From: Podarcis gaigeae
Taxonomy: Eukaryota
Length of the DNA: 63,964 bases
Strand: one strand, 5' to 3'
Assembly: GCA_964106915.2 (NCBI GenBank)
Contig: OZ066914.1
A program made the position numbers and the translations under genes. The notes under the pieces are model-generated. The model had not been told where the DNA came from. It searched no databases and saw nothing but the letters and a program-made list of their open reading frames with translations. Positions 1,632-31,859 of the stretch are shown here, one piece after another; within the stretch, counting starts at the first letter, position 1; each line of letters starts with the position of its first letter.

Positions 1632-1963
1632 TCAGGGCGAGCCCTTGGCTGGAGAAGAGGGAGCAGAACGCATCGCTGGCTGTGTCGGGCTCGACTCGGA
1701 GGTGGGGCTGTGAAAAGGAACCGCAGCGCAAGGGACGACCATCCCTTCCCGCTCCCTTTTCTTCTGTTTCATCCTCCGATTCTGGAACCAGATCTTCACC
1801 TGAGTATCATTGAGGCCCAGGGATTTGGCGATCTCCACGCGTCGGGCCCGGGTGAGGTACTTGTTGAAGTGAAACTCTTTCTCCAGCTCCGTGAGTTGCT
1901 TGGTGCTGAAATTGGTCCGGACAGCACTGGGAGGGCTGGGAGATCCATAGGTGGAGAGCTTGC
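1632..1963 (-). CDS. HOXD1: Homeobox protein Hox-D1, coding exon 2 (homeodomain)
   Basis: Acceptor ...ccccatagcag| then [73 protein letters not shown]; TGA at 1634-1632; 529+332=861 nt, 286 aa; LNDTQ and linkage to HOXD3/HOXD4 indicate D1. Confidence 0.95.
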
Positions 1964-2069
1964 CTGCTATGGGGTAAGAAGAGAGTTAGGGAACTGTTAG
2001 GGAATTAATGCCCAAATCATGGGACCTGGCGCTGGTTCTAACCACACAGCGTCTGAACGCACCCAGGTC

Positions 2070-2203
2070 TGTTGATTAGAGCTTAGTGCTGATAACGCCA
2101 AAGTTTGCCGGTTTATCCCCGTATGGGACAGCTGCATATTCCTGCATTGCAGGGGGTTGGACTAGATGATCCTCAGGGTCCCTTCCAACTCTACAATTCT
2201 ATG
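2070..2203 (+). mobile_element. tRNA-derived SINE with CR1-like tail in the HOXD1 intron
   Basis: tRNA-like GCTGATAACGCCAA..GGTT..ATCCCC followed by GGTTGGACTAGATGATCCTCAGGGTCCCTTCCAACTCTACAATTCTATGA; related copies at about 14795-14925(-), 24653-24803(+), 35190-35397(-). Confidence 0.75.
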
Positions 2204-2724
2204 AAACCCGGATTGGCTTATGCTGAAGAACCGCCACGTGTGCTTGTTTTAACTTCAAAGTCAATGTGGCTTGACAAAGTGGGGATGCGCACCGTGCGCC
2301 ACGTCCGTTGAACATGAATTATGTTAAGCAATAAGAACCCCCACCCCAAACGCGTTTCCTGGCTTTCACCCAGCTGCTCTTCCAAAGATATGCGCTTAGG
2401 GTCACAGCCTTAGAAGCAGGTAGATGGAAGCGATCCAAGTTCAGGAAAGGCTCTTTTACATCGGGGAAAAAGAAAGCCCCAGGTCCATGCTTTACGAGGG
2501 GTTGAACAAGTTTCCTTTCATTTCCCGCCAGATCTTAAAACCCTTTTCCATTGAATGGAAGAAAAGTACCGTCAACATCAGCAGTACTTGTTTCCAGAAT
2601 GGAAGATTGCACAGGTACTTGGGAGTAAGCCCCACGAAGTTCAGTGGCGCTCACTTCCGAGTTAACCAGCGCAGAACCAGGAGGGAGGTGGGACATGTCG
2701 GTTTCAGGCTCAGAACCCAGGACC

Positions 2725-2873
2725 CAAGGATGCCAACTTGAATAAAATATTGGGGGCCCAGGTAAGCCCTGCCCCGCGTAATAGATCACAAAACGTGGCG
2801 CGCATACACCATTTTAATAGCAATGCCCATTAACTTTGGGGGGCGAAGGGACTCTTAAGAGTTGCCTCCTACG
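2725..2873 (+). mobile_element. hAT-type MITE (family A) in the HOXD1 intron
   Basis: GCCAACTTGAATAAAATATTGGGG ... GAGTTGCCTCCTACG; 8-bp TSD CCAGGACC/CTAGGACC. Confidence 0.75.
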
Positions 2874-2938
2874 CTAGGACCCGAGTATTGGACAGCCCAC
2901 AGCTCACTTGGCGCGCCCACCCAAGGCGCGACACTTAC

Positions 2939-3467
2939 TTTTCGGGGGCGCGTTCCTCTTGACTTTCATCCACTCGAAGGTGCTGAGCGCGATCCGGGAG
3001 CCGGCCTTGACGCAGAAGTCCGAGGAAGGGGGCGGCGGGGGCGGCGCATCCTTGGCGCAAGGCTGGAAGGTGTCGCTGAGCGCGCCGTAGTCCACTTGGA
3101 GGTAAGCGCCGCCGCCGCCACCACCACCCGCAAAGATAGACGTGGTGGCGTAGTGGAGGGGAGCGCCGGCCTCGTCTGGGCCGCCGGGGGCCGCGTAAGG
3201 CGCCTCGGGCCGGAGCAAGCTGTACTCTGCCGCCGCGAAAGCGCTGCGCGCCAGGGCGCAAGGCGCCAGCTGTTGCTGCGGTTGCGCCGAGCGCGGGGAG
3301 AAGTCCGGCAAGCTTCCTGCCGCCGGCGTGGGGTAGGCGCCTTCCCCGCCCGCGGACAGGGGACAGGGCGGCCGCAGAGCCACGCCACCGGGCTCGGAGC
3401 TCCCGAATTTGGTCGCCAAGCTCAAGCCATCTCCGCCCCGCGCGAGATACTCCAGGAAGGAGTTCAT
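2939..3467 (-). CDS. HOXD1: Homeobox protein Hox-D1, coding exon 1
   Basis: ATG at 3467 (MNSFLEYL, Hox1-type N-terminus); hexapeptide TFEWMKVKRN; donor A|GTAAGT at 2939/2938; 529 nt, phase 1. Confidence 0.95.
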
Positions 3468-11413: not shown

Positions 11414-11532
11414 TTGTAACTTAGTGTGGGGGTACATTATTATTATTTATTTTATAATGCATACAAAGCACGTAAACACTTCTAAGTGCTGTACATATAT
11501 TGGAAGATAAGCCATTAGTCCTATAAAAAAGA

Positions 11533-11909
11533 GGTAAAGGACCCCTGGATGGTTAAGTCCAGTCAAAGGCGACTATGGGGTTGTAGCACTTATATCTTTT
11601 TCAGGCCGAGGGAGCCAGATTTTGTCCACAGACAGCTTTTCCAGGTTGGTGTGGCCAGCATGACTAAAGGGCTTCTGGCACAACAGAACACCATGACAGA
11701 AACCAGAGCGCACGAAAACGCCATTTACCTTCCCATTGTAGCGGTACCTATTTATCTACTTGCACTGGCATGCTTTCGAACTGCTAGATTGGCAGAAGCT
11801 GGGACAGAGCAATGGGAACTCACTCCATCGCAGGGATTCAAACCACTGAGCTTCTGATCGGCAAGGCCAAGAAGCTCAGTGGTTTAGATCACAGTGCCAC
11901 CCACGTCCC
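11533..11909 (-). mobile_element. Sauria SINE
   Basis: tRNA-like head GGGACG..GGTGGCACTGTG on minus; core GGTACCTATTTATCTACTTGCAC; ACCTTT-type tail; homologous to copies at 20089 and 23853. Confidence 0.88.
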
Positions 11910-12644
11910 TAATCAAAGTAGTAGGTGAAATTTGTGTCCATATTCCTACTTGTGCTATGAAATTCGCTGGATGACCTTGTCTCTCACAGAGTTGTTCTGA
12001 GGGTAAGATGAGGTAGCCTTATACTCATTTGAGAATGAGGGACATAAATATAACTAAAGCACTGAAAAATAAAGATGGCATCTCAGACCGGATCATTTTT
12101 CAAGCTGCCCATTCTTACTACTTTATAGCGTTGCCTGTTACCATTGCCTAACTGTAGGGAAATGAACACCAGGGTTCAGCTCTCTTTGAAAACAATGCCC
12201 TACTATATAATCCTTGACTGCTCTGTGACTCATTAGTGAGGAAGACGAACTCTTCACCTGGAGCATTTTTTAAAATGCTGGCAATCCAGTCAAGCCATTC
12301 TGTTGAGGTTTGTCCTGTTTGGTGGCTGAATCCTGACAATAGTTCAATTGCATTCATGTCCTGTTTACAGGCTTCTTATTTATTCATGTACTTTATTGCA
12401 GTTATATCTCACTTTTTTCTCCTTGGAGCTCAGTGTGACATACGTGGTTCTCCCCCTTCTTATTTAATCGTCACAATTGCCCTATGAGATAGGTAAGATT
12501 GAGTGCTGTGATCTCACAGACCCCAGTCCAGCACTCTAAACATTATGCCACACTGGTATCTGGTTGGCCACTGTAAGAATAGGATGCTGGAACAGATTAT
12601 TTTCATACATTCTTATGGTGAAAAGAATTTCTGAAGCTGAATCC

Positions 12645-17507: not shown

Positions 17508-17983
17508 NNNNNNNNNNNNNNNNNNNNNNNNNNNNNNNNNNNNNNNNNNNNNNNNNNNNNNNNNNNNNNNNNNNNNNNNNNNNNNNNNNNNNNNNNNNNN
17601 NNNNNNNNNNNNNNNNNNNNNNNNNNNNNNNNNNNNNNNNNNNNNNNNNNNNNNNNNNNNNNNNNNNNNNNNNNNNNNNNNNNNNNNNNNNNNNNNNNNN
17701 NNNNNNNNNNNNNNNNNNNNNNNNNNNNNNNNNNNNNNNNNNNNNNNNNNNNNNNNNNNNNNNNNNNNNNNNNNNNNNNNNNNNNNNNNNNNNNNNNNNN
17801 NNNNNNNNNNNNNNNNNNNNNNNNNNNNNNNNNNNNNNNNNNNNNNNNNNNNNNNNNNNNNNNNNNNNNNNNNNNNNNNNNNNNNNNNNNNNNNNNNNNN
17901 NNNNNNNNNNNNNNNNNNNNNNNNNNNNNNNNNNNNNNNNNNNNNNNNNNNNNNNNNNNNNNNNNNNNNNNNNNNNNNNNNNN
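17508..17983. other. Assembly gap (476 N)
   Basis: Run of N. Confidence 1.
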
Positions 17984-18471: not shown

Positions 18472-20088
18472 AGAAGATCTAAATATAAAGACACAAGCAT
18501 TAATATTAATATCAATGACAATAAAACTCAACAAAGCACCGTAAACAATGCCACAACACAAGTCTGTTCAGCAGCTTTTGTAGTTTGAGTCAGTCAGAGC
18601 CCCACCTTCCCAGGCCTGGTGGGAAAAGGCCAGCAAGGCAGGGATCAGGTCTTTCAGGACTCACAGCCAATATGGTTTCTGGCCATGTCAGTAGCTTCAG
18701 CTTTGTAGCTGGAGTCAGTCCACCCTCCCAGGGAAAAAGGCCAGCAAGGCAGGGAGCAGATCTTACAGGACTCACAGCCAACCATGGCTCAGGACATAAA
18801 GCTGATTTCATAAAATGATTATTTTTCAGGCTTATTGGGAAGTCCCACTCAGCTCAGTAGGACGGTTGTGTAAACATGTACAGGATCATGACCCATGTCT
18901 GATTTTGCAGAACTTCGTACACATCCTCCTTAAAAACATGTCTGAGAAGATAGGTGTTTCCATTAAAAAAGTGTGTGTGTTTAAAAAAAGTGACTTAAAA
19001 GAAAGATTGTTCACAAATTCTTTGGTAAGATCTCTTCCTTCCCTCCTTTTCAAAATCCTGAGTGTTTCAGCGTTCAGAGAAACATTCAGTAATGCTAATG
19101 CTCCAGTTCTGAGAATGTGTTCTATCAGTTCATCTGCCTTCAATGCTGTTGTTATAATGACACATTTGGCACCCATTACACTGAGTCAGCAGTTGGCAAA
19201 CCCCACCATAAGTACACACATGCTGGTGCAGCAAATTAGGGACTTCAGTAACATACATTTCCCTTATCCCTGTACAGTTTGGATGAGCAACAAGAAAAGG
19301 AACAGGCCTATTAACCAAGTGCCTTTTTAACCAGCAAATCTGTTAGTTAACTACATTAAATTATATTTCCATTCGACCATTGACTTATTAGAAGACTGCA
19401 TGTTAGAAGCATGTTTCCCTAGAAGGAAGTCTCACTCAGTTCAGTGGTCCTTACTCCCTAGCAATTGTGCTTAGGACTGCAGCCTAAAATGTGATCCTAT
19501 GCCTGTCTACTTGTATTCAGTGGGACTCAGGCCAAGATTTGTGTGCGTAGGGCTTCATTATTCAAAAACTCCCTTTTTGAAATGCAAAAGGAAATGCGAT
19601 GTCAATTTCCTTACAATGTCAATTAGAAGGAAAGGTCATGGTTAATATTTTCTTCTTAATTCCCTATTTCTGTTAGCGGGGTTTAATGGAATAAGGTTTA
19701 GGGATTGTGATGCCGCTGAATATTTAGAATAGTTCTGTATTTATTTTATTTTTCATATGGTGGGAGGCTGTGGGTTGGGCTGAACACCTAAAGTGATACA
19801 ACTTTTTGGAAAGGTGAGCCAGCAGAAATTATGTCACATCTCTCTGGAAAAAGCATATTCATGGGCATTTTAATTAATGATAGGCAAAAAAGCCTATTTT
19901 TATTTTGTTTCTTTGCACGTGGATTTTGTTGACATGTATTGGAAATCCTTGAAGGGGGAGAAAGCCTTTCATACTTGAAATGACACTACATTTCATATCA
20001 ACTGTTAGTTGAAGCTGTACTTCATGTGGTATTTGGATTTAAGGGAGGAGTGGTATAGTGGTTAGAGTGACAGACTAGGACTTGGGAG

Positions 20089-20423
20089 TAAAGGTAAAGG
20101 GACCCCTGACCATTAGGTCCAGTCGTGACCAACTCTGGGGTTGCGGAGCTCATCTTGCTTTACTGGCCGAGGGAGCCGGAGTACAGCTTCCGGGTCATGT
20201 GGCCAGCATGACTAAGCCACTTCTGGCGAACCAGAAACACTGTTTACCTTCCCGCCGGAGTGGTACCTATTTATCTACTTGCACTCTGACGTGCTTTCTA
20301 ACTGCTAGGTTGGCAGGAGCAGGGACCGAGCAACGGGAGCTCACCCCGTCGGGTATTGAACAACCGACCTTCTGAGCGGCAAGTCCTAGGCTCTGTGGTT
20401 TAACCCACAGCCACCCGCATCCC
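20089..20423 (-). mobile_element. Sauria SINE
   Basis: Near full-length copy with AAAGGTAAAGG tail; sits immediately downstream of the Hox2 relic. Confidence 0.9.
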
Positions 20424-20507
20424 AGTCAAGAGATTAGTAGGTGCATATTAGACAGCTCCTCCTGGCCGTGCTTTCTGGCTGAATTCCATCTGGCCCCGGA
20501 CGCGAGC

Positions 20508-20574
20508 GGGAGGAGGAGGAGGAGGGGCTGCTGTCGAGTGAAAAGTGCACACACGGAGTGATTGATGAACTCTT
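20508..20574 (-). pseudogene. Relic of Hox paralog-group-2 exon 1 (putative HOXD2 remnant) containing an intact Hox/Pbx site
   Basis: Minus strand AGTTCATCAATCA-ctccgtgtgtgcactttt-CACTCGACA-gcagcc-CCTCCTCCT reads SSSI-(19 nt, +1 frameshift)-HST-AA-PPPPPP, versus the Hox2 motif SSSIKTSTLSHSTLIPPP; lies between HOXD3 and HOXD1 on the Hox strand. Confidence 0.7.
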
Positions 20575-21368
20575 CATAGAACTACAAAAATTATTTTAAA
20601 AAAATCCGCCCCATTGGCCCTCCTGTCTCACCGCGACTGCCCTGCTCCCAGCAGTAAGGAAGAACACACAGCCCTCCTTCCTTCCCCACTGGGAAACGCG
20701 ACTTCCCTTGGTAATAACCAAAGAAGAGATTTGTTTCTTGCTGGCGATCAACTTACCATTCAGTCTCTCTCCTGATGAAAGTAGCTGAGGCCCCCAAAGT
20801 AGCGGAGACCTGGCCAAGCTCTCGCGCCTTTCCAGAGGCGGCGCTGGGTTAATGAATGAGCGCAGTGCCTGCCACGTGGTCGCACAAAGAGGCTCCGCCA
20901 ACTCGTCTCGGGCCACGCAGCGAAGCGAGAGTGGGAAGAGCGATTCCCAACCCCGCACTCCTGCGCGCTATTGTTCGATTTCAGGCTCCCAGCCCTGGGA
21001 TTGCGCGAGGAAGAGACTCTTTCCAAGAGTGTGCCTGGCCTGGTGTTGTTGCTGGCAAACGTTTGCCATTCCAAGCCAGAACCTTCTTGATTTATTTATT
21101 TTTTAAACCATTGTGCTGTGTGTGGTTAGGGGAGGTTGTTTGGTTTTTGGAAAGAGTCTGGTTTCTGCGCCTTGGAAGGCAAAACGGAGCCTGGTGAAAG
21201 ACGTCGGGGGCTTCCTTTTCTTAAGCTGCAATGTTTCTGCCAGGGTGGTTTGGGAGAGGTGACTGCAACTGCCACCCTAATCGTGGACTGCTGTATATAA
21301 GAAAAAGCAGCCTGAACAGGTTTATTGTGGCACGAACTTTGTGTGCCACAATAAATCTGCTTTCCAAG

Positions 21369-21558: not shown

Positions 21559-22412
21559 CTTCCAAGGGTTAGAAGGGTGGTTCTGCCACAACGTTCTAGC
21601 GTAGCACTCTAGAAAAGAATTTTGTTGCAGCAACAAGCGCGGAAGACCAGTGAAGTATCCTAACTCTGCACAAGGCCGTTGCCTTTGCTGTATTTCTTCT
21701 CTGCACAGTACTGGAGCCTCTTCTTTTCCTTCTGTCACACCACAGACCAGCACGGCAGGGTTTTAAATGAATGGATCTGGGATCCAGAGCTCTTTTGGTT
21801 CCTATAGCAAGCTGACTCTGTTTTGCATGAATTGTATTAATTTGTGTGTGTGTGTAATATGCATAATTTGTATAACTGGGTTAAAAAATGGAAAATCAAT
21901 ACAAAATAATTGGCAAAAAAGAGAGAGTTTTGCCTAGTCTACGTATGTCAGTGGTGTCCAAACTTTTTTCACCAGATTTGATGAAGTGAATGGCCGACCA
22001 AAGGGCCAACCAAAGTTGCTGAGGGGTTTTTTTAAGGATTTAACCACAGGTAATAAATTGCCATAGGGACCGGATTAAACCGACCAGCGGGCCGGATTAG
22101 GCCCCCGAAAGGGACTTTGGACATTCCTGACGTAGCTGATCCGGATTGGGACCGGATGGGTGGATTTCCATCTCCTGACATTAAGTGGTGGTGTGGTGCC
22201 CCTGATCAAAGGCATCTTGGCACCGATGGCTTTGCCCCACCGAAAGCACTAGACAATGGTCCTCTCTGCGCTCATTAATCACCACCACTTCATGACCAGA
22301 GGAGTCCGGGACAGAATCCCCACGTGACGAGGCCCCAATGATTGGCTGAAAGGACGGATGAGGAGGTGATGGAATCCATCTATTTACCACCCTGATTGAG
22401 AGTACACCCGGG

Positions 22413-23852: not shown

Positions 23853-24202
23853 GGGACACGGGTGGCGCTGTGGGTTAAACCTCAGAGCCTAGGACTTGCT
23901 GATCAAAATGTCGGTGGTTCCAAACGCCGCGACAGGGTGAGCTCCTGTTGCTCGGTCCCTGCTCCTGCCAACCTAGCAGTTTGAAAGCACGTCAAAGTGC
24001 AAGTAGATAAATAGATACCACTCCGGCAGGAAGATAAATGGCGTTTCCCTGCGCTGCTCTGGTTCACCAGAAGTGGCTTAGTCTTGCTGGCCACATGACC
24101 CGAAGCTGTACACCGCCTCCCTCGGCCAGTAAAGCGAGATGAGCGTCGCAACCCCAGAGTCGGCCATGACTGGACCTAATGGTCAGGGGTCCCTTTACCT
24201 TT
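23853..24202 (+). mobile_element. Sauria SINE, full length
   Basis: GGGACACGGGTGGCGCTGTGG head to CCTTTACCTTT tail; 14-bp TSD CCTAACATTGGATA (23838-23851 / 24203-24216). Confidence 0.92.
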
Positions 24203-24879
24203 CCTAACATTGGATACAACCTCGCGCGTCTCTACGGGAAAGCATGCCCTCCTGAGTTCAAGTGAGCCACTTTCTCTATAGCTCACCATGTCGTGACGTT
24301 TTGGTTGGTCCTAACAGACGCAAAGATTTTGGCATTATTGTCAAGCAAAAGGCTGCTGCTTTTACGGATTGGTTGTTGAACTCAATTGAATTCTAAATCT
24401 CTTGGGGTGGGTAGTTTTCAATCACTCTGCTCAGCCCCATTGCCTTTGGTGGAACTCTCCCACGAGAGGTATGTGACGATTGGGTGCCAAACCAGTACTT
24501 TCGATGCTAAGTACTGTACGCTTACTTGGCAATAGGTCATATGATATTGGACTCCGGTGGGACTTCTTCTGAGTAACTACGCGTAAGATCAGGTTAGAAC
24601 AGCCAGAATGCTACAATACTAAACGGAACTGAAACCCACCCTGCGCTTGTATCCTGTGGCGCAATGGGTTAGTGCGCCTGGCTGCTAACCAGAAGGTTGG
24701 TGGTTCGAGGCCACCCAGGGATGGCTGTGGGCGGGATTCGTCCTATTGCACAAGGAATTGAACTATGAACCTCGGGGTTTCGTTCAACTCTATGACTCTA
24801 TGTTTCCCTGTCCCAAGCAAACTGACCACTCTCCGATCCTACTTCTGACCTTTACTTTTGTGTTTAAGGTAGGATGTTA

Positions 24880-28100: not shown

Positions 28101-29894
28101 TGATTCTCAGGCTCTCTCGCGCACACATTCACACGCACGCGGATCTTTCCTTGTCGCCCTAGCTTCTTTCTGCCCACATGCAATACCACAATAAGCCACA
28201 ATCGAGTTTACCACTTTGGGGTGCAGTGGGTAAGTCTAAATTAAAAGCGAAGGCACGCCACGCAATAAAATCAAGGGCAAAAGAGGAAGACTATTTCAAA
28301 ATTTAGACTTTGTTTCCCTTTAAGAAGGGAGAAGGGAGTTTGTTAGGGTAGCCTAGTCCCTGTTTTTTCTTTCTTTTCACCTTAACCATTGAAAAAAATG
28401 GGAGGGGGGTAATGCTGGCGTCCTCCAAAAGCACATTCTTGGCTTTGGCCAGGAATCTGGCGCAGCTAAAATGAAGATGAGTTACATTTAAAGGCAAGTC
28501 CCCGCGACCTTCCTCCTGGTGTTCTTGAAAAGACATGGGCTTAGATGCTCCTGGGGAGAAGGACTGTTGACTCTTTGTAAAAAGGGGTGTGGGGGGGGAG
28601 AGAAATATTCTTGGACCCGCTTACAGCACATTGTATTTGATTCAGATAACACCCCACCAATTCAGGAAGCTAAACGGAGCAAGATTTATGTTAGGTGTGG
28701 AAACGGGTTGTATATCATTTATGACGATCCGAAATGCGCGCGAAAGCCAAAGGGATGTTGTGCCAGAAACGTCTTTGAGCTTAAAGCAGAGCCATTAAAA
28801 TCCGTGGGAGAGTTGCCATTGACTTCTATGAAGAGTCCCTCCTCTCCTCCATCTCTCGCTCTCGGGCACGGATCCCACAGCTGTTTACTTGGAAGTAAGC
28901 GCCAATTTAATCAATGGGGCTTTCTGGCCAAGTAATTTGCTTAGCCTCGGCGTGTTCCTCCGGGGCTGGCCTCCTGAGTCGGGGGGGGGGGAGAGCCAGA
29001 AATAGAGCCAAGAGGAGACGTCGCTGTCCAGTAATTGGGTTACGCTTTAAATGGAGCCCTATGCCAATTCTAACAATATACTCCTACACAATCCCTGAAA
29101 TGTACGATTTCGAGACTCACTTATGAAGGCTATAATGTATATATGTATAGCGCAGTCTGCTCAAATCCCCATTGAGAGGGTGCCAATTGAGTGCTATGAA
29201 TATTTTGAGAAAGGCTATCCCAATTTTTCTACGTATGTACAGAACTGTGTGTGTGTGTGTGTGTGTTAGTTTATAATCCCTCCCAGCGATGCTTATAAAT
29301 TATCGTGTCCCCTTTACTTGACTTTAAGAGGGAATAATAATGCAAGCCAGCCAAGGCACCATTTGAAGTCGAGCCCATAAAACATTAAGCTGTGCATAAC
29401 ACGTTGGGCCTCCCAGTCCCGCAGACTCAGCGGATGCCTTCTGAGTGACACACCAGACCATAAAAGGCCCACAGGGTTGGACTCTTTGTGCATTGTTTTG
29501 ATTTATAGTACTATGTGAAATATGCCCTCACATGAAGAACATAAAAATAAAATCTACATGCACTATTTATTTATCAATTCAGTTGCCGGGAATTCCCTAG
29601 AAGACATATTAGAAAATCATTTTGTTGTGGTTGTAGCAGCTCACCAGTTGTGCGTATTATTAGTTATTGTATTGTGATTATTGTTTTTTTTTAATGCTGG
29701 AAGAAACAGAAACTGCCATAGAAAGCCACTTTAGATCTGGAAGTGGTTAAAATATTTCTTCATTTGAAGCTGTTTATTCTGTTTTGTTTACAGATCTACA
29801 ACACTTGGGTAAAAGTGAGATTTAACAAAACGATACATTTCCCCCTCTTCTCTCAGTTAACAACATGGTATTTTTTAAAAAAGATAACGAGGTG

Positions 29895-29897
<3 letters not shown>

Positions 29898-29943
<46 letters not shown>
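29898..29943. repeat. (TA)n microsatellite
   Basis: Direct inspection. Confidence 0.95.
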
Positions 29944-29948
<5 letters not shown>

Positions 29949-30525
29949 GTTATACTATATATATCCATATCCATCCTCGTTGTCTAGACAGACACAAATG
30001 TAGGAGTAAAAACCTCTCACACACAAAAAGAATTGCAGTAGTTGCCATCATAGGACGTGGAGAGATGGAGCTGCATTATTAGTCAAACTGAAAAGTGAGG
30101 TTTTGCTACTGTTCTGTGGGACTTCAAAAGATCTGAATCTTAACTGAGTGCTTTTTAAAGCGATAAGGGATGCTTCCTTCTGAATTAATGGGCTTGTATC
30201 GCTTCTAACGTGTACCTAATGCCACTTTCATGTTGAGAAAAGCTTTATAAAACCCAGTAAGAGATTAAATGCAACATACAAATAAAGAGGAAGAGTGGGG
30301 CGGGGGAGGATGTTTGCGTTTCCTGTCCCTTCTAGGCTCGGGGCAGAAACATTAGTTTACACAAGGATTGTACCAATGTCTGCTACAGAAGACTATATTA
30401 AATATTGATAGACCTAATTTCCTATCTCGAAAGCCATTCTGAGCATTTCAGAAGGACTTCGGCTCCTAAACCCTACCGCAGTCTTTCCTTTGTAGATACT
30501 TGATTGTCAATATTTCATTCAAAGT

Positions 30526-30585: not shown

Positions 30586-31859
30586 CCTCCCCTCCCTGTT
30601 CAGCAAAAGTAAGTTCGCGTTTCCAGTGACTTGTACAAAATTGATTTATGGTTAGCATAAATATCATATCATATAAATAATAATAATAATAATAGTAACA
30701 AAAATAATAACTGAAACAACAGTTTTAGCCTGAATCGCTAAGAAAATCCTAATTACATCAACAGTATTATATTGCTCCTAAATGTCAGTCTGAAGGTGTT
30801 GCATATTTTAGACTTTAAAATTATAAACAAGCAACCAGGCGAAATGGTGTGTGCAACAGATAGGAAGGAACCAATTTATGTATGCAGAAGTTGGTCAAAG
30901 ACCAAAGAGTCAACTGGCCACTATATAGCAGAATATAACAATATATGAGATATAAGGTAGCTTTTAATGCTAAGTAAAACCATACCAAACAATCTGAAAT
31001 AAATAAACATGTGATATATATAGATAGATATATATTAAAATAAAAAATGTATCGGCTCTTTTGTGTAATGTTTCAGTTTTTGTATTAATCTATGACTTAC
31101 AATTTGCTTAATCCTTACATAAACTACAAACACCAGCCACTGTTACAACTGTTCAAAACTACTCTTTCTATTTCAGACCAAATATACTAAATAGGTGAAA
31201 ATGTATAGTCACCAAAGACCTGAATCAATCTTCCCAAGTTAAGGGGGAAAGGGGGTGTGAAGAAACTCTACAAATATCCACATAAATACATTGAAGACCA
31301 GGATTAAATAATCAATGATACAAAAAAAAAGAGTTCCTCTTAAAATAATAAATACATCTTATTTAAGTCCAAAGCAATCTTTCACATTACTGGAGAAAAA
31401 AAATCTTATAAATTATAACTCTCGAAGTAAGTCTCCGTTTTGGTCCCAAATGTTGTAAACGCCTCATCAGGACTCACTTTCGCCGAGTTCTAATGGATTT
31501 CTACAACTTACCTTCCAGTACATCGTTACCAATTATTACTCCCTTAAGGGAATGATTAGATTTATTTATTTTTGTTAAGGATATTGCACTGCCATGCTTT
31601 TAAACGGCTAAAACATTTAAGAGGACAACAAGGGGTGGGGGGTGGGGCGGAAATAATTCTCATGGACTCGGTCGCCAAAGAAAACAAGAAAAAGGTAGCT
31701 TCTACCGGGGACACACAAAAAAACCCACTGTAATACTCAAAGTAATACTGCAACGTCAGGGGCAAAGTGAGGTAATTTAAACGCGAATGCATTTCAATCT
31801 CTCTCTCTCGCTTTCTTTCTCTCTCTCTCTTTCTTTCTTTCTGAACGCGTTTCAGTCTA

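What the first reader, a model, noticed from the sequence alone, without database searches (positions are those of the whole stretch)
20508..20574. Fossil HOXD2 exon 1 surviving as a Hox/Pbx enhancer element
Seen: between HOXD3 and HOXD1, on the Hox strand, the sequence reads AGT TCA TCA ATC [19 nt] CAC TCG ACA GCA GCC CCT CCT CCT CCT CCT CCC, i.e. SSSI..HST-AA-PPPPPP with a +1 frameshift. TGATTGAT(GA) at 20559-20568 is intact. Established: HOXA2/HOXB2 exon 1 encodes FQSSSIKxSTL(SHSTL)IPPP, with 18 nt between SSSI and HST in HOXA2. The SSI codons overlap an ultraconserved Hox-Pbx responsive element of Hoxa2 that is active in rhombomere 4. Tetrapods have no functional HoxD2, whereas cartilaginous fish keep it. 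Inference: this is the remnant of HOXD2, in which the protein code decayed but the exonic enhancer stayed under selection. It could now serve HOXD1/HOXD3 or a local lncRNA. The Hox2 comparison is from memory, and I cannot tell whether this remnant has been reported.
Basis: partly seen in the sequence, partly recalled or inferred. Interest (0 to 1): 0.88.

Follow-up and report, generated by a model that had tools for sequence, protein, structure and literature searches.

The report
Ancient Hox2-exon copy upstream of HoxD1
This short stretch is not the corpse of the lost HOXD2 gene but a separate non-coding copy of part of a Hox2 exon, kept beside HoxD1 by jawed vertebrates from chimaeras to mammals, most likely as a switch bound by Hox and Pbx proteins.

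Summary
The sequence is as described, and its likeness to Hox2 exon 1 is real, but it is not the HOXD2 fossil. The window is a squamate HoxD cluster. The stretch is the core of a ~125-bp conserved non-coding element (20457-20586) with orthologues in cheetah, turtle, bowfin, elephant shark and a teleost. Elephant shark and bowfin carry it 2.9 and 1.4 kb downstream of an intact HoxD2. The teleost contig holds both the true decayed hoxd2 exon 1 (Pbx/Hox site mutated) and, 1.8 kb on, this element (site intact). A profile built from the element alone picks out Hox2 first exons (B2, D2, A2) and nothing else, so it is a duplicate of that exon segment older than the shark/bony-fish split; the donor is unresolved. 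TGATTGATGA, identical to the tested Hoxa2 site, and an E-box are kept in all six species; no frame or RNA fold is. No copy was found in the A2-A1 or B2-B1 intervals examined. Best reading: a Pbx/Hox response element for HoxD1 or its neighbours; activity is untested. I found no report of this paralogy, but key Hox CNE papers were not available. The scan had not found it on other DNA.

The parts
20457..20586 (-). Gnathostome conserved non-coding element, paralogous to the Hox2 exon-1 segment coding roughly TFQSSSIK..PPPFEQ
   Evidence: HMM envelope; orthologues L001:20347-20477, L002:17930-18041, L003:19341-19462, L004:12794-12919, L011:6265-6348
20559..20568 (+). PBX-HOX site TGATTGATGA (fits TGATNNATKR), identical to the Hoxa2 exonic HRE
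   Evidence: All 10 columns invariant in six species; site tested in PMC2425489; unique in window
20531..20547 (-). Middle block (GCACTTTT..TCGACAG), partly inherited from the exon, partly element-specific
   Evidence: Alignments; degenerate in turtle
20508..20526 (-).
20487..20492 (-). E-box (CAGATG here and in the teleost, CAGCTG in the other four) inside a nearly invariant GCCAG-TGG block; not present in Hox2 exons
20087..20423 (.). High-copy interspersed repeat ending ~35 bp from the element; not part of it
   Evidence: Further copies at 23853-24205 and 11532-11927; very high contig depth
31860..36517 (-). HOXD3 coding region (upstream neighbour; stop 11.3 kb from the site)
1632..3467 (-). 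HOXD1 coding region (downstream neighbour and likeliest target; ATG 17.1 kb from the site)

Best explanation
Before cartilaginous and bony fish split, about 85-110 bp of a Hox2 first exon, including its Pbx/Hox site, was copied in the same orientation into the HoxD2-HoxD1 interval (shown: homology, position, minimum age; inferred: local duplication). The copy lost its frame, gained an E-box and, in fishes, a MEIS/PREP-type site, and has since been kept as a DNA element in its own right (shown: conservation pattern). It most likely works as a Hox1/Hox2-Pbx response module that feeds auto- or cross-regulation to HoxD1, or to HoxD3 or the local non-coding transcripts (inferred; not tested). It outlived HoxD2 in amniotes and in a teleost.
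For: Coexists with intact HoxD2 in elephant shark and two bowfin assemblies and with a true pseudo-hoxd2 exon in a teleost. Shark vs cheetah element 79% over 114 bp; shark element vs shark D2 exon 72% over 85 bp. The six elements form one clade, 100/100. An element-only HMM hits B2 (E 1.8e-5), D2 (1.7e-4), A2 (1.1e-3) and lamprey Hox2 (0.087) exon 1, next best hit 0.39. The 10-mer and an E-box are kept in all six, with changes that preserve CANNTG. 16 of 61 conserved columns differ from conserved exon bases, so it has its own constraint. CTGTCA lies 26 nt from the site in elephant shark, TTGTCA in bowfin. The same 10-mer binds Hoxa1/Hoxa2-Pbx (PMC2425489). Xenopus Hoxd1 autoregulates with Meis3, element unknown (PMC3065463).
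Against: No activity or binding data. No TGACAR within 200 bp in lizard, turtle or cheetah; a conserved PBX-HOX site alone gave hindbrain activity in only 7 of 29 CNEs (PMC4489388). The Hoxa2 UCE alone had no activity in chick. The target gene is inferred from position only. The turtle and teleost copies have drifted a lot outside the two motif blocks.
Confidence: 0.7

Rival explanations
1. The element is the last relic of a whole extra Hox2-like gene that once sat in tandem between Hox2 and Hox1; its function today is the same DNA module.
For: Same orientation as the Hox genes and a gene-like slot. The segment copied is the part of Hox2 that also carries a cis-regulatory constraint. The tree does not reject a split older than A2/B2/D2 (p-AU 0.36).
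Against: No promoter, start, hexapeptide or homeobox remnant near it even in elephant shark or bowfin. True Hox2 pseudogenes in teleosts keep more of the gene, though they are much younger.
Confidence: 0.15
2. Its main role is as a promoter or start-site module for a non-coding RNA in the D3-D1 interval rather than as a distal enhancer.
For: It sits in a CpG-rich stretch in the lizard and in GC-rich DNA in cheetah and turtle. Mouse has Haglr and two other non-coding RNAs in this interval (PMC5676926). Low-depth contigs from putative RNA runs lie next to it at 20614-20941.
Against: Those contigs have depth ~3, may be DNA and show no strand; no listed piece spans the element. The CCAAT/GC-box-like flank of the lizard is not conserved in the other species.
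Confidence: 0.08
3. It is kept so that an antisense RNA from HoxD can pair with Hox2 mRNAs in trans.
For: Antisense transcription crosses this interval in mouse; trans-antisense Hox pairs have been proposed (PMC1831499).
Against: Identity to exons is only 66-72%, with a longest perfect run of 13 nt; 16 conserved columns and a fixed 1-nt gap differ from the exons. It is not among the trans pairs of that paper. No conserved RNA fold on either strand.
Confidence: 0.03
4. Chance or convergence: an unrelated CNE that shares a Pbx/Hox site with Hox2.
For: The lizard copy alone is only modestly similar to D2 beyond the motif (324 of 50,000), and part of the match is a CCT run.
Against: Shark and cheetah copies beat nearly all of 50,000 random windows with the motif excluded; near-colinear match over 85 bp, E ~1e-8.
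Confidence: 0.02
5. One reading: it is the decayed exon 1 of HOXD2 itself.
For: It lies between HOXD3 and HOXD1 and resembles Hox2 exon 1; no other D2 trace was found in the amniote intervals examined.
Against: The lizard sequence aligns better to the downstream element of shark and bowfin (local scores 30, 36) than to D2 exon 1 (13), and those species keep HoxD2 intact.
Confidence: 0.02

Closest known systems
Hoxa2 exonic Hox-Pbx responsive element in a 205-bp UCE (PMC2425489)
   Same: Identical 10-bp site and homologous flanks over ~60-85 bp.
   Different: Non-coding, in the HoxD2-D1 interval, lacks the 5' half of the UCE and the intronic partner sites, and has its own E-box. Activity untested.
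Regulatory exonic remnants left after teleost genome duplication (PMC2831330)
   Same: Exon-derived non-coding sequence kept after its coding role went.
   Different: Here the copy sits a few kb from an intact parent-type gene in the same cluster, predates the teleost duplication, and derives from a developmental gene rather than a bystander gene.
True Hox2 pseudogenes (psi-hoxd2 fragment in Pantodon, PMC4166920; teleost loci L010 and L011 here)
   Same: Hox2-derived, non-coding.
   Different: They occupy the Hox2 slot, and the two examined here have lost or mutated the Pbx/Hox site; this element keeps it and lies further 3'.
PBX-HOX plus MEIS/PREP hindbrain CNEs (PMC3261376, PMC4489388) and the Hoxb1 autoregulatory element
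   Same: KR-type site; full two-motif syntax in elephant shark; position 5' of a Hox1 gene.
   Different: The MEIS site is missing in the three amniotes. The six HoxD CNEs named in PMC4489388 are other elements as far as the supplement passages show. No homologue in the B2-B1 interval.

Membership tests
Unitary pseudogene of HOXD2 | Orthologous to HoxD2: occupies its slot and is absent as a separate element where HoxD2 is intact | tested here: not met
   Separate orthologue beside intact HoxD2 in elephant shark and bowfin and beside pseudo-hoxd2 in a teleost
Unitary pseudogene of HOXD2 | Other D2 remnants nearby (promoter, start, hexapeptide, homeobox) | tested here: not met
   blastn and tblastn of shark D2 against lizard, turtle and cheetah intervals found none; turtle and cheetah covered for 10 kb only
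Exon-derived conserved non-coding element | Significant homology to a coding exon beyond a short motif | tested here: met
Exon-derived conserved non-coding element | No conserved reading frame | tested here: met
   Frame-breaking indels and stops differ among orthologues
Exon-derived conserved non-coding element | Syntenic conservation across distant vertebrates | tested here: met
   Lizard, turtle, cheetah, bowfin, teleost, chimaera; birds, amphibians and coelacanth not examined
PBX-HOX/MEIS hindbrain enhancer | Conserved TGATNNATKR site | tested here: met
   Invariant in six species
PBX-HOX/MEIS hindbrain enhancer | MEIS/PREP site within 40-100 bp | tested here: not met
   Absent in lizard, turtle and cheetah; CTGTCA in elephant shark and TTGTCA in bowfin
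PBX-HOX/MEIS hindbrain enhancer | Hox/Pbx binding and hindbrain reporter activity | not testable with these tools
   Needs ChIP data or transgenics
Structured or known non-coding RNA | Rfam match or covarying structure | tested here: not met
   No Rfam hit there; consensus folds -5 to -6 kcal/mol without a favourable covariation term
Paralogous CNE from the two vertebrate genome duplications | Counterpart at the same place in another Hox cluster | tested here: inconclusive
   None in paddlefish A2-A1, elephant shark B2-B1 or 10 kb after one lamprey Hox2; HoxC and other cyclostome clusters not examined
Transposable element | Repeated elsewhere in the genome | tested here: not met
   Single copy in the window; one long contig per related-lizard DNA run spans it at ordinary depth, unlike the flanking repeat. 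No TE library was searched.

The most novel reading that the evidence does not exclude
The element is the only surviving trace of an unrecorded extra Hox2-type gene that sat between Hox2 and Hox1 in an early vertebrate cluster, and its exonic enhancer was recycled as the missing auto/cross-regulatory element of HoxD1.
Probability: 0.15. Interest if true: 0.85.

Novelty: new variant of a known kind. Interest (0 to 1): 0.6.

Why it matters
It gives a traceable origin for a deeply conserved enhancer-like element: a copied piece of a Hox coding exon that split protein code from binding-site code while the parent-type gene was still alive, then outlasted it. It shows that a local duplication happened inside a Hox cluster in early jawed vertebrates or before. 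It also names one 10-bp site to test as the direct element for HoxD1 autoregulation, which PMC3065463 left unlocated. It warns against annotating this stretch as pseudo-HOXD2.

Tried and rejected
HOXD2 fossil: rejected. Other D2 remnants in amniote intervals: none. Homeobox or other Hox2 parts near the element in shark and bowfin: none. Donor (A2, B2, D2 or older): no topology rejected, p-AU 0.33-0.44. The first null was contaminated by the real elements and was redone with them masked. Small ORF 20574-region (47 codons from the ATG): frame not conserved. RNA family or fold: none. A weak site in the shark B2-B1 interval (L006:14176, HMM E 2.8) is not significant. Expression: putative RNA hits were mostly the flanking repeat. 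Failed look-ups: swift and coelacanth HOXD3 loci not on record; bichir gave a gene table (D3, D2, D1) without DNA. Literature: ten counted searches found no report of this paralogy; the elephant shark Hox paper and the Hox CNS footprinting paper were not held. The metagenome DNA-pattern scan was not run, to avoid pulling human contigs. No human contig was fetched; human rows and coordinates shown in paper supplements were not saved or aligned. The N gap at 17508-17983 was left as is.

Full report
Setting. The window holds HOXD4, HOXD3 and HOXD1 on the minus strand and miR-10. HOXD3 exon 1 is closest to Rhineura, Tiliqua and Heteronotia proteins, so the genome is a squamate. The finding lies 11.3 kb past the HOXD3 stop and 17.1 kb before the HOXD1 start.

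Observation. The letters are as reported. TGATTGATGA at 20559-20568 is the only copy in the window and equals the Hoxa2 exonic site whose mutation abolished Hox response and r4 activity in PMC2425489. To avoid memory I fetched real Hox2 genes: elephant shark D2 and B2, bowfin D2, paddlefish A2 and a lamprey Hox2. Excluding the motif, the next 45 nt of the lizard copy match B2 and A2 exon 1 better than all but 24 and 22 of 50,000 random windows, and D2 better than all but 324; shark and cheetah orthologues are matched by 0-8.

The test that changes the reading. In the elephant shark locus HoxD2 is intact at L001:15977-17497, yet the best match to the lizard stretch is L001:20366-20421, 2.9 kb past the D2 stop. 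Two bowfin assemblies show the same order: D3, intact D2, the element 1.4 kb later, D1 2.6 kb after that. An unnamed teleost contig (HoxD3 exon 2 98% like anchovy) carries hoxd3, then a decayed hoxd2 exon-1 fragment 82% like bowfin D2 whose Pbx/Hox site has one substitution, then the element with the site intact, then hoxd1. Cheetah and turtle have the element 6.2 and 5.6 kb past HOXD3. Shark and cheetah copies are 79% alike over 114 bp, against 72% over 85 bp for the shark copy and its own D2 exon. The six copies form one clade at 100/100. The lizard stretch is therefore orthologous to this element, not to HoxD2. No other trace of HoxD2 was found in the amniote intervals examined.

Origin. 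An HMM built from five element copies, with no exon in it, finds only Hox2 first exons as further hits: B2 1.8e-5, D2 1.7e-4, A2 1.1e-3, bowfin D2 0.033, lamprey 0.087; the next hit is 0.39. Invertebrate Hox2-like proteins already carry a related ETF..SSI stretch, which suggests the coding exon is the older sequence (inference). So a piece of a Hox2 exon was copied before chimaeras and bony fish split (about 450 million years, from general knowledge). The donor cannot be fixed from ~110 columns: sister to D2, B2, A2 or outside all three are equally acceptable (p-AU 0.33-0.44). No counterpart was found between paddlefish A2 and A1, elephant shark B2 and B1, or within 10 kb after one lamprey Hox2. 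HoxC and other cyclostome clusters were not examined. No start, hexapeptide or homeobox remnant flanks the element in shark or bowfin, so a small segmental copy is simpler than a dead whole gene, but age could have erased the rest.

Anatomy. All ten bases of the site are invariant in six species while the bases around them vary. A second block holds an E-box 65-76 nt away in all six, CAGCTG in four and CAGATG in lizard and teleost; Hox2 exons lack it. Of 61 columns conserved among the elements, 37 equal the exon consensus and 16 differ from conserved exon bases, so the element has its own constraint and is not tracking the exon. A 1-nt loss relative to the exons is shared by shark, bowfin and cheetah; the lizard added 2 nt and expanded the CCT run. 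No frame is kept. Elephant shark has CTGTCA 26 nt from the site and bowfin TTGTCA; the amniotes have no TGACAR within 200 bp. There is no Rfam match or supported fold. In DNA runs of two related organisms the listed differences fall beside the 10-mer, not in it, but the table is truncated.

How it most likely works. Shown: conserved DNA motifs and a fixed position 5' of HoxD1. From the literature: this exact 10-mer is bound by Hoxa1/Hoxa2 with Pbx (PMC2425489); Xenopus Hoxd1 autoregulates with Meis3 by an unlocated element (PMC3065463). Inferred: the element is a Hox1/2-Pbx response module, aided by a bHLH site, acting on HoxD1 or possibly HoxD3 or the non-coding RNAs known in this interval in mouse (PMC5676926). 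My odds: not the HOXD2 remnant 0.97; derived from a Hox2 exon 0.95; works as a DNA-binding module 0.8; HoxD1 the main target 0.5. Rhombomere-4 activity in amniotes is doubtful, since a PBX-HOX site without a MEIS site predicted hindbrain activity in only 7 of 29 tests (PMC4489388). Expression data were uninformative: putative RNA contigs covered mainly the adjacent repeat, plus depth-3 pieces at 20614-20941 that may be DNA.

Comparison and novelty. It works like the Hoxa2 HRE and resembles the regulatory exonic remnants of PMC2831330, but it fails membership as a HOXD2 pseudogene and, in amniotes, the two-motif hindbrain syntax. What differs from known cases is a local copy kept beside an intact parent-type gene and surviving that gene's loss in two lineages. 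As a plain CNE it is probably listed in Hox alignment catalogues; I could not check the main ones. Ten searches found no mention of its Hox2 origin, which is not proof of novelty.

Noticed in passing
window 22321-22340, - strand: A CATTGG-N-CA(C/T)GTG pair. On the Hox strand the same pattern occurs elsewhere only at Hox2 and Hox1 promoters among the loci held. It lies 1.8 kb upstream of the element, where a D2 promoter could have been, but has no flanking similarity to fish D2 promoters, is absent from turtle and cheetah, and abuts a repeat.
   Followed up: partly
L011:4439-4594: True decayed hoxd2 exon-1 fragment in a teleost, with no homeobox found and the Pbx/Hox site mutated; similar fragments are P0293, P0295 and P0299.
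   Followed up: partly
L010:1050-1954: Teleost Hox2 pseudogene next to a hoxa1-like gene; keeps its start and a broken homeobox but has lost the HRE.
   Followed up: partly
proteins P0130, P0133, P0147, P0152 and P0122-P0127: HoxD2 proteins of sturgeon, gar, bowfin, reedfish, sharks and rays are labelled 'Hox-A2-like' by their sources but group with elephant shark HoxD2.
   Followed up: yes
window 31031-31397: About 350 bp just past the HOXD3 stop conserved to elephant shark at ~70%.
   Followed up: no
window 29333-30154: Three amniote-level conserved blocks downstream of HOXD3, shared with turtle and cheetah.
   Followed up: no
L006:14176-14198: Isolated PBX-HOX-type site in the elephant shark B2-B1 interval at a similar distance from Hox2 as the D element; weak similarity only (HMM E 2.8).
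   Followed up: partly
window 24651-24723: tRNA-like Rfam hit (44 bits) inside the D3-D1 interval, probably a repeat head.
   Followed up: no
window 3467-31860: The D3-D1 interval is 28 kb, against 7.5 kb in bowfin, with several repeat copies inside the cluster.
   Followed up: no
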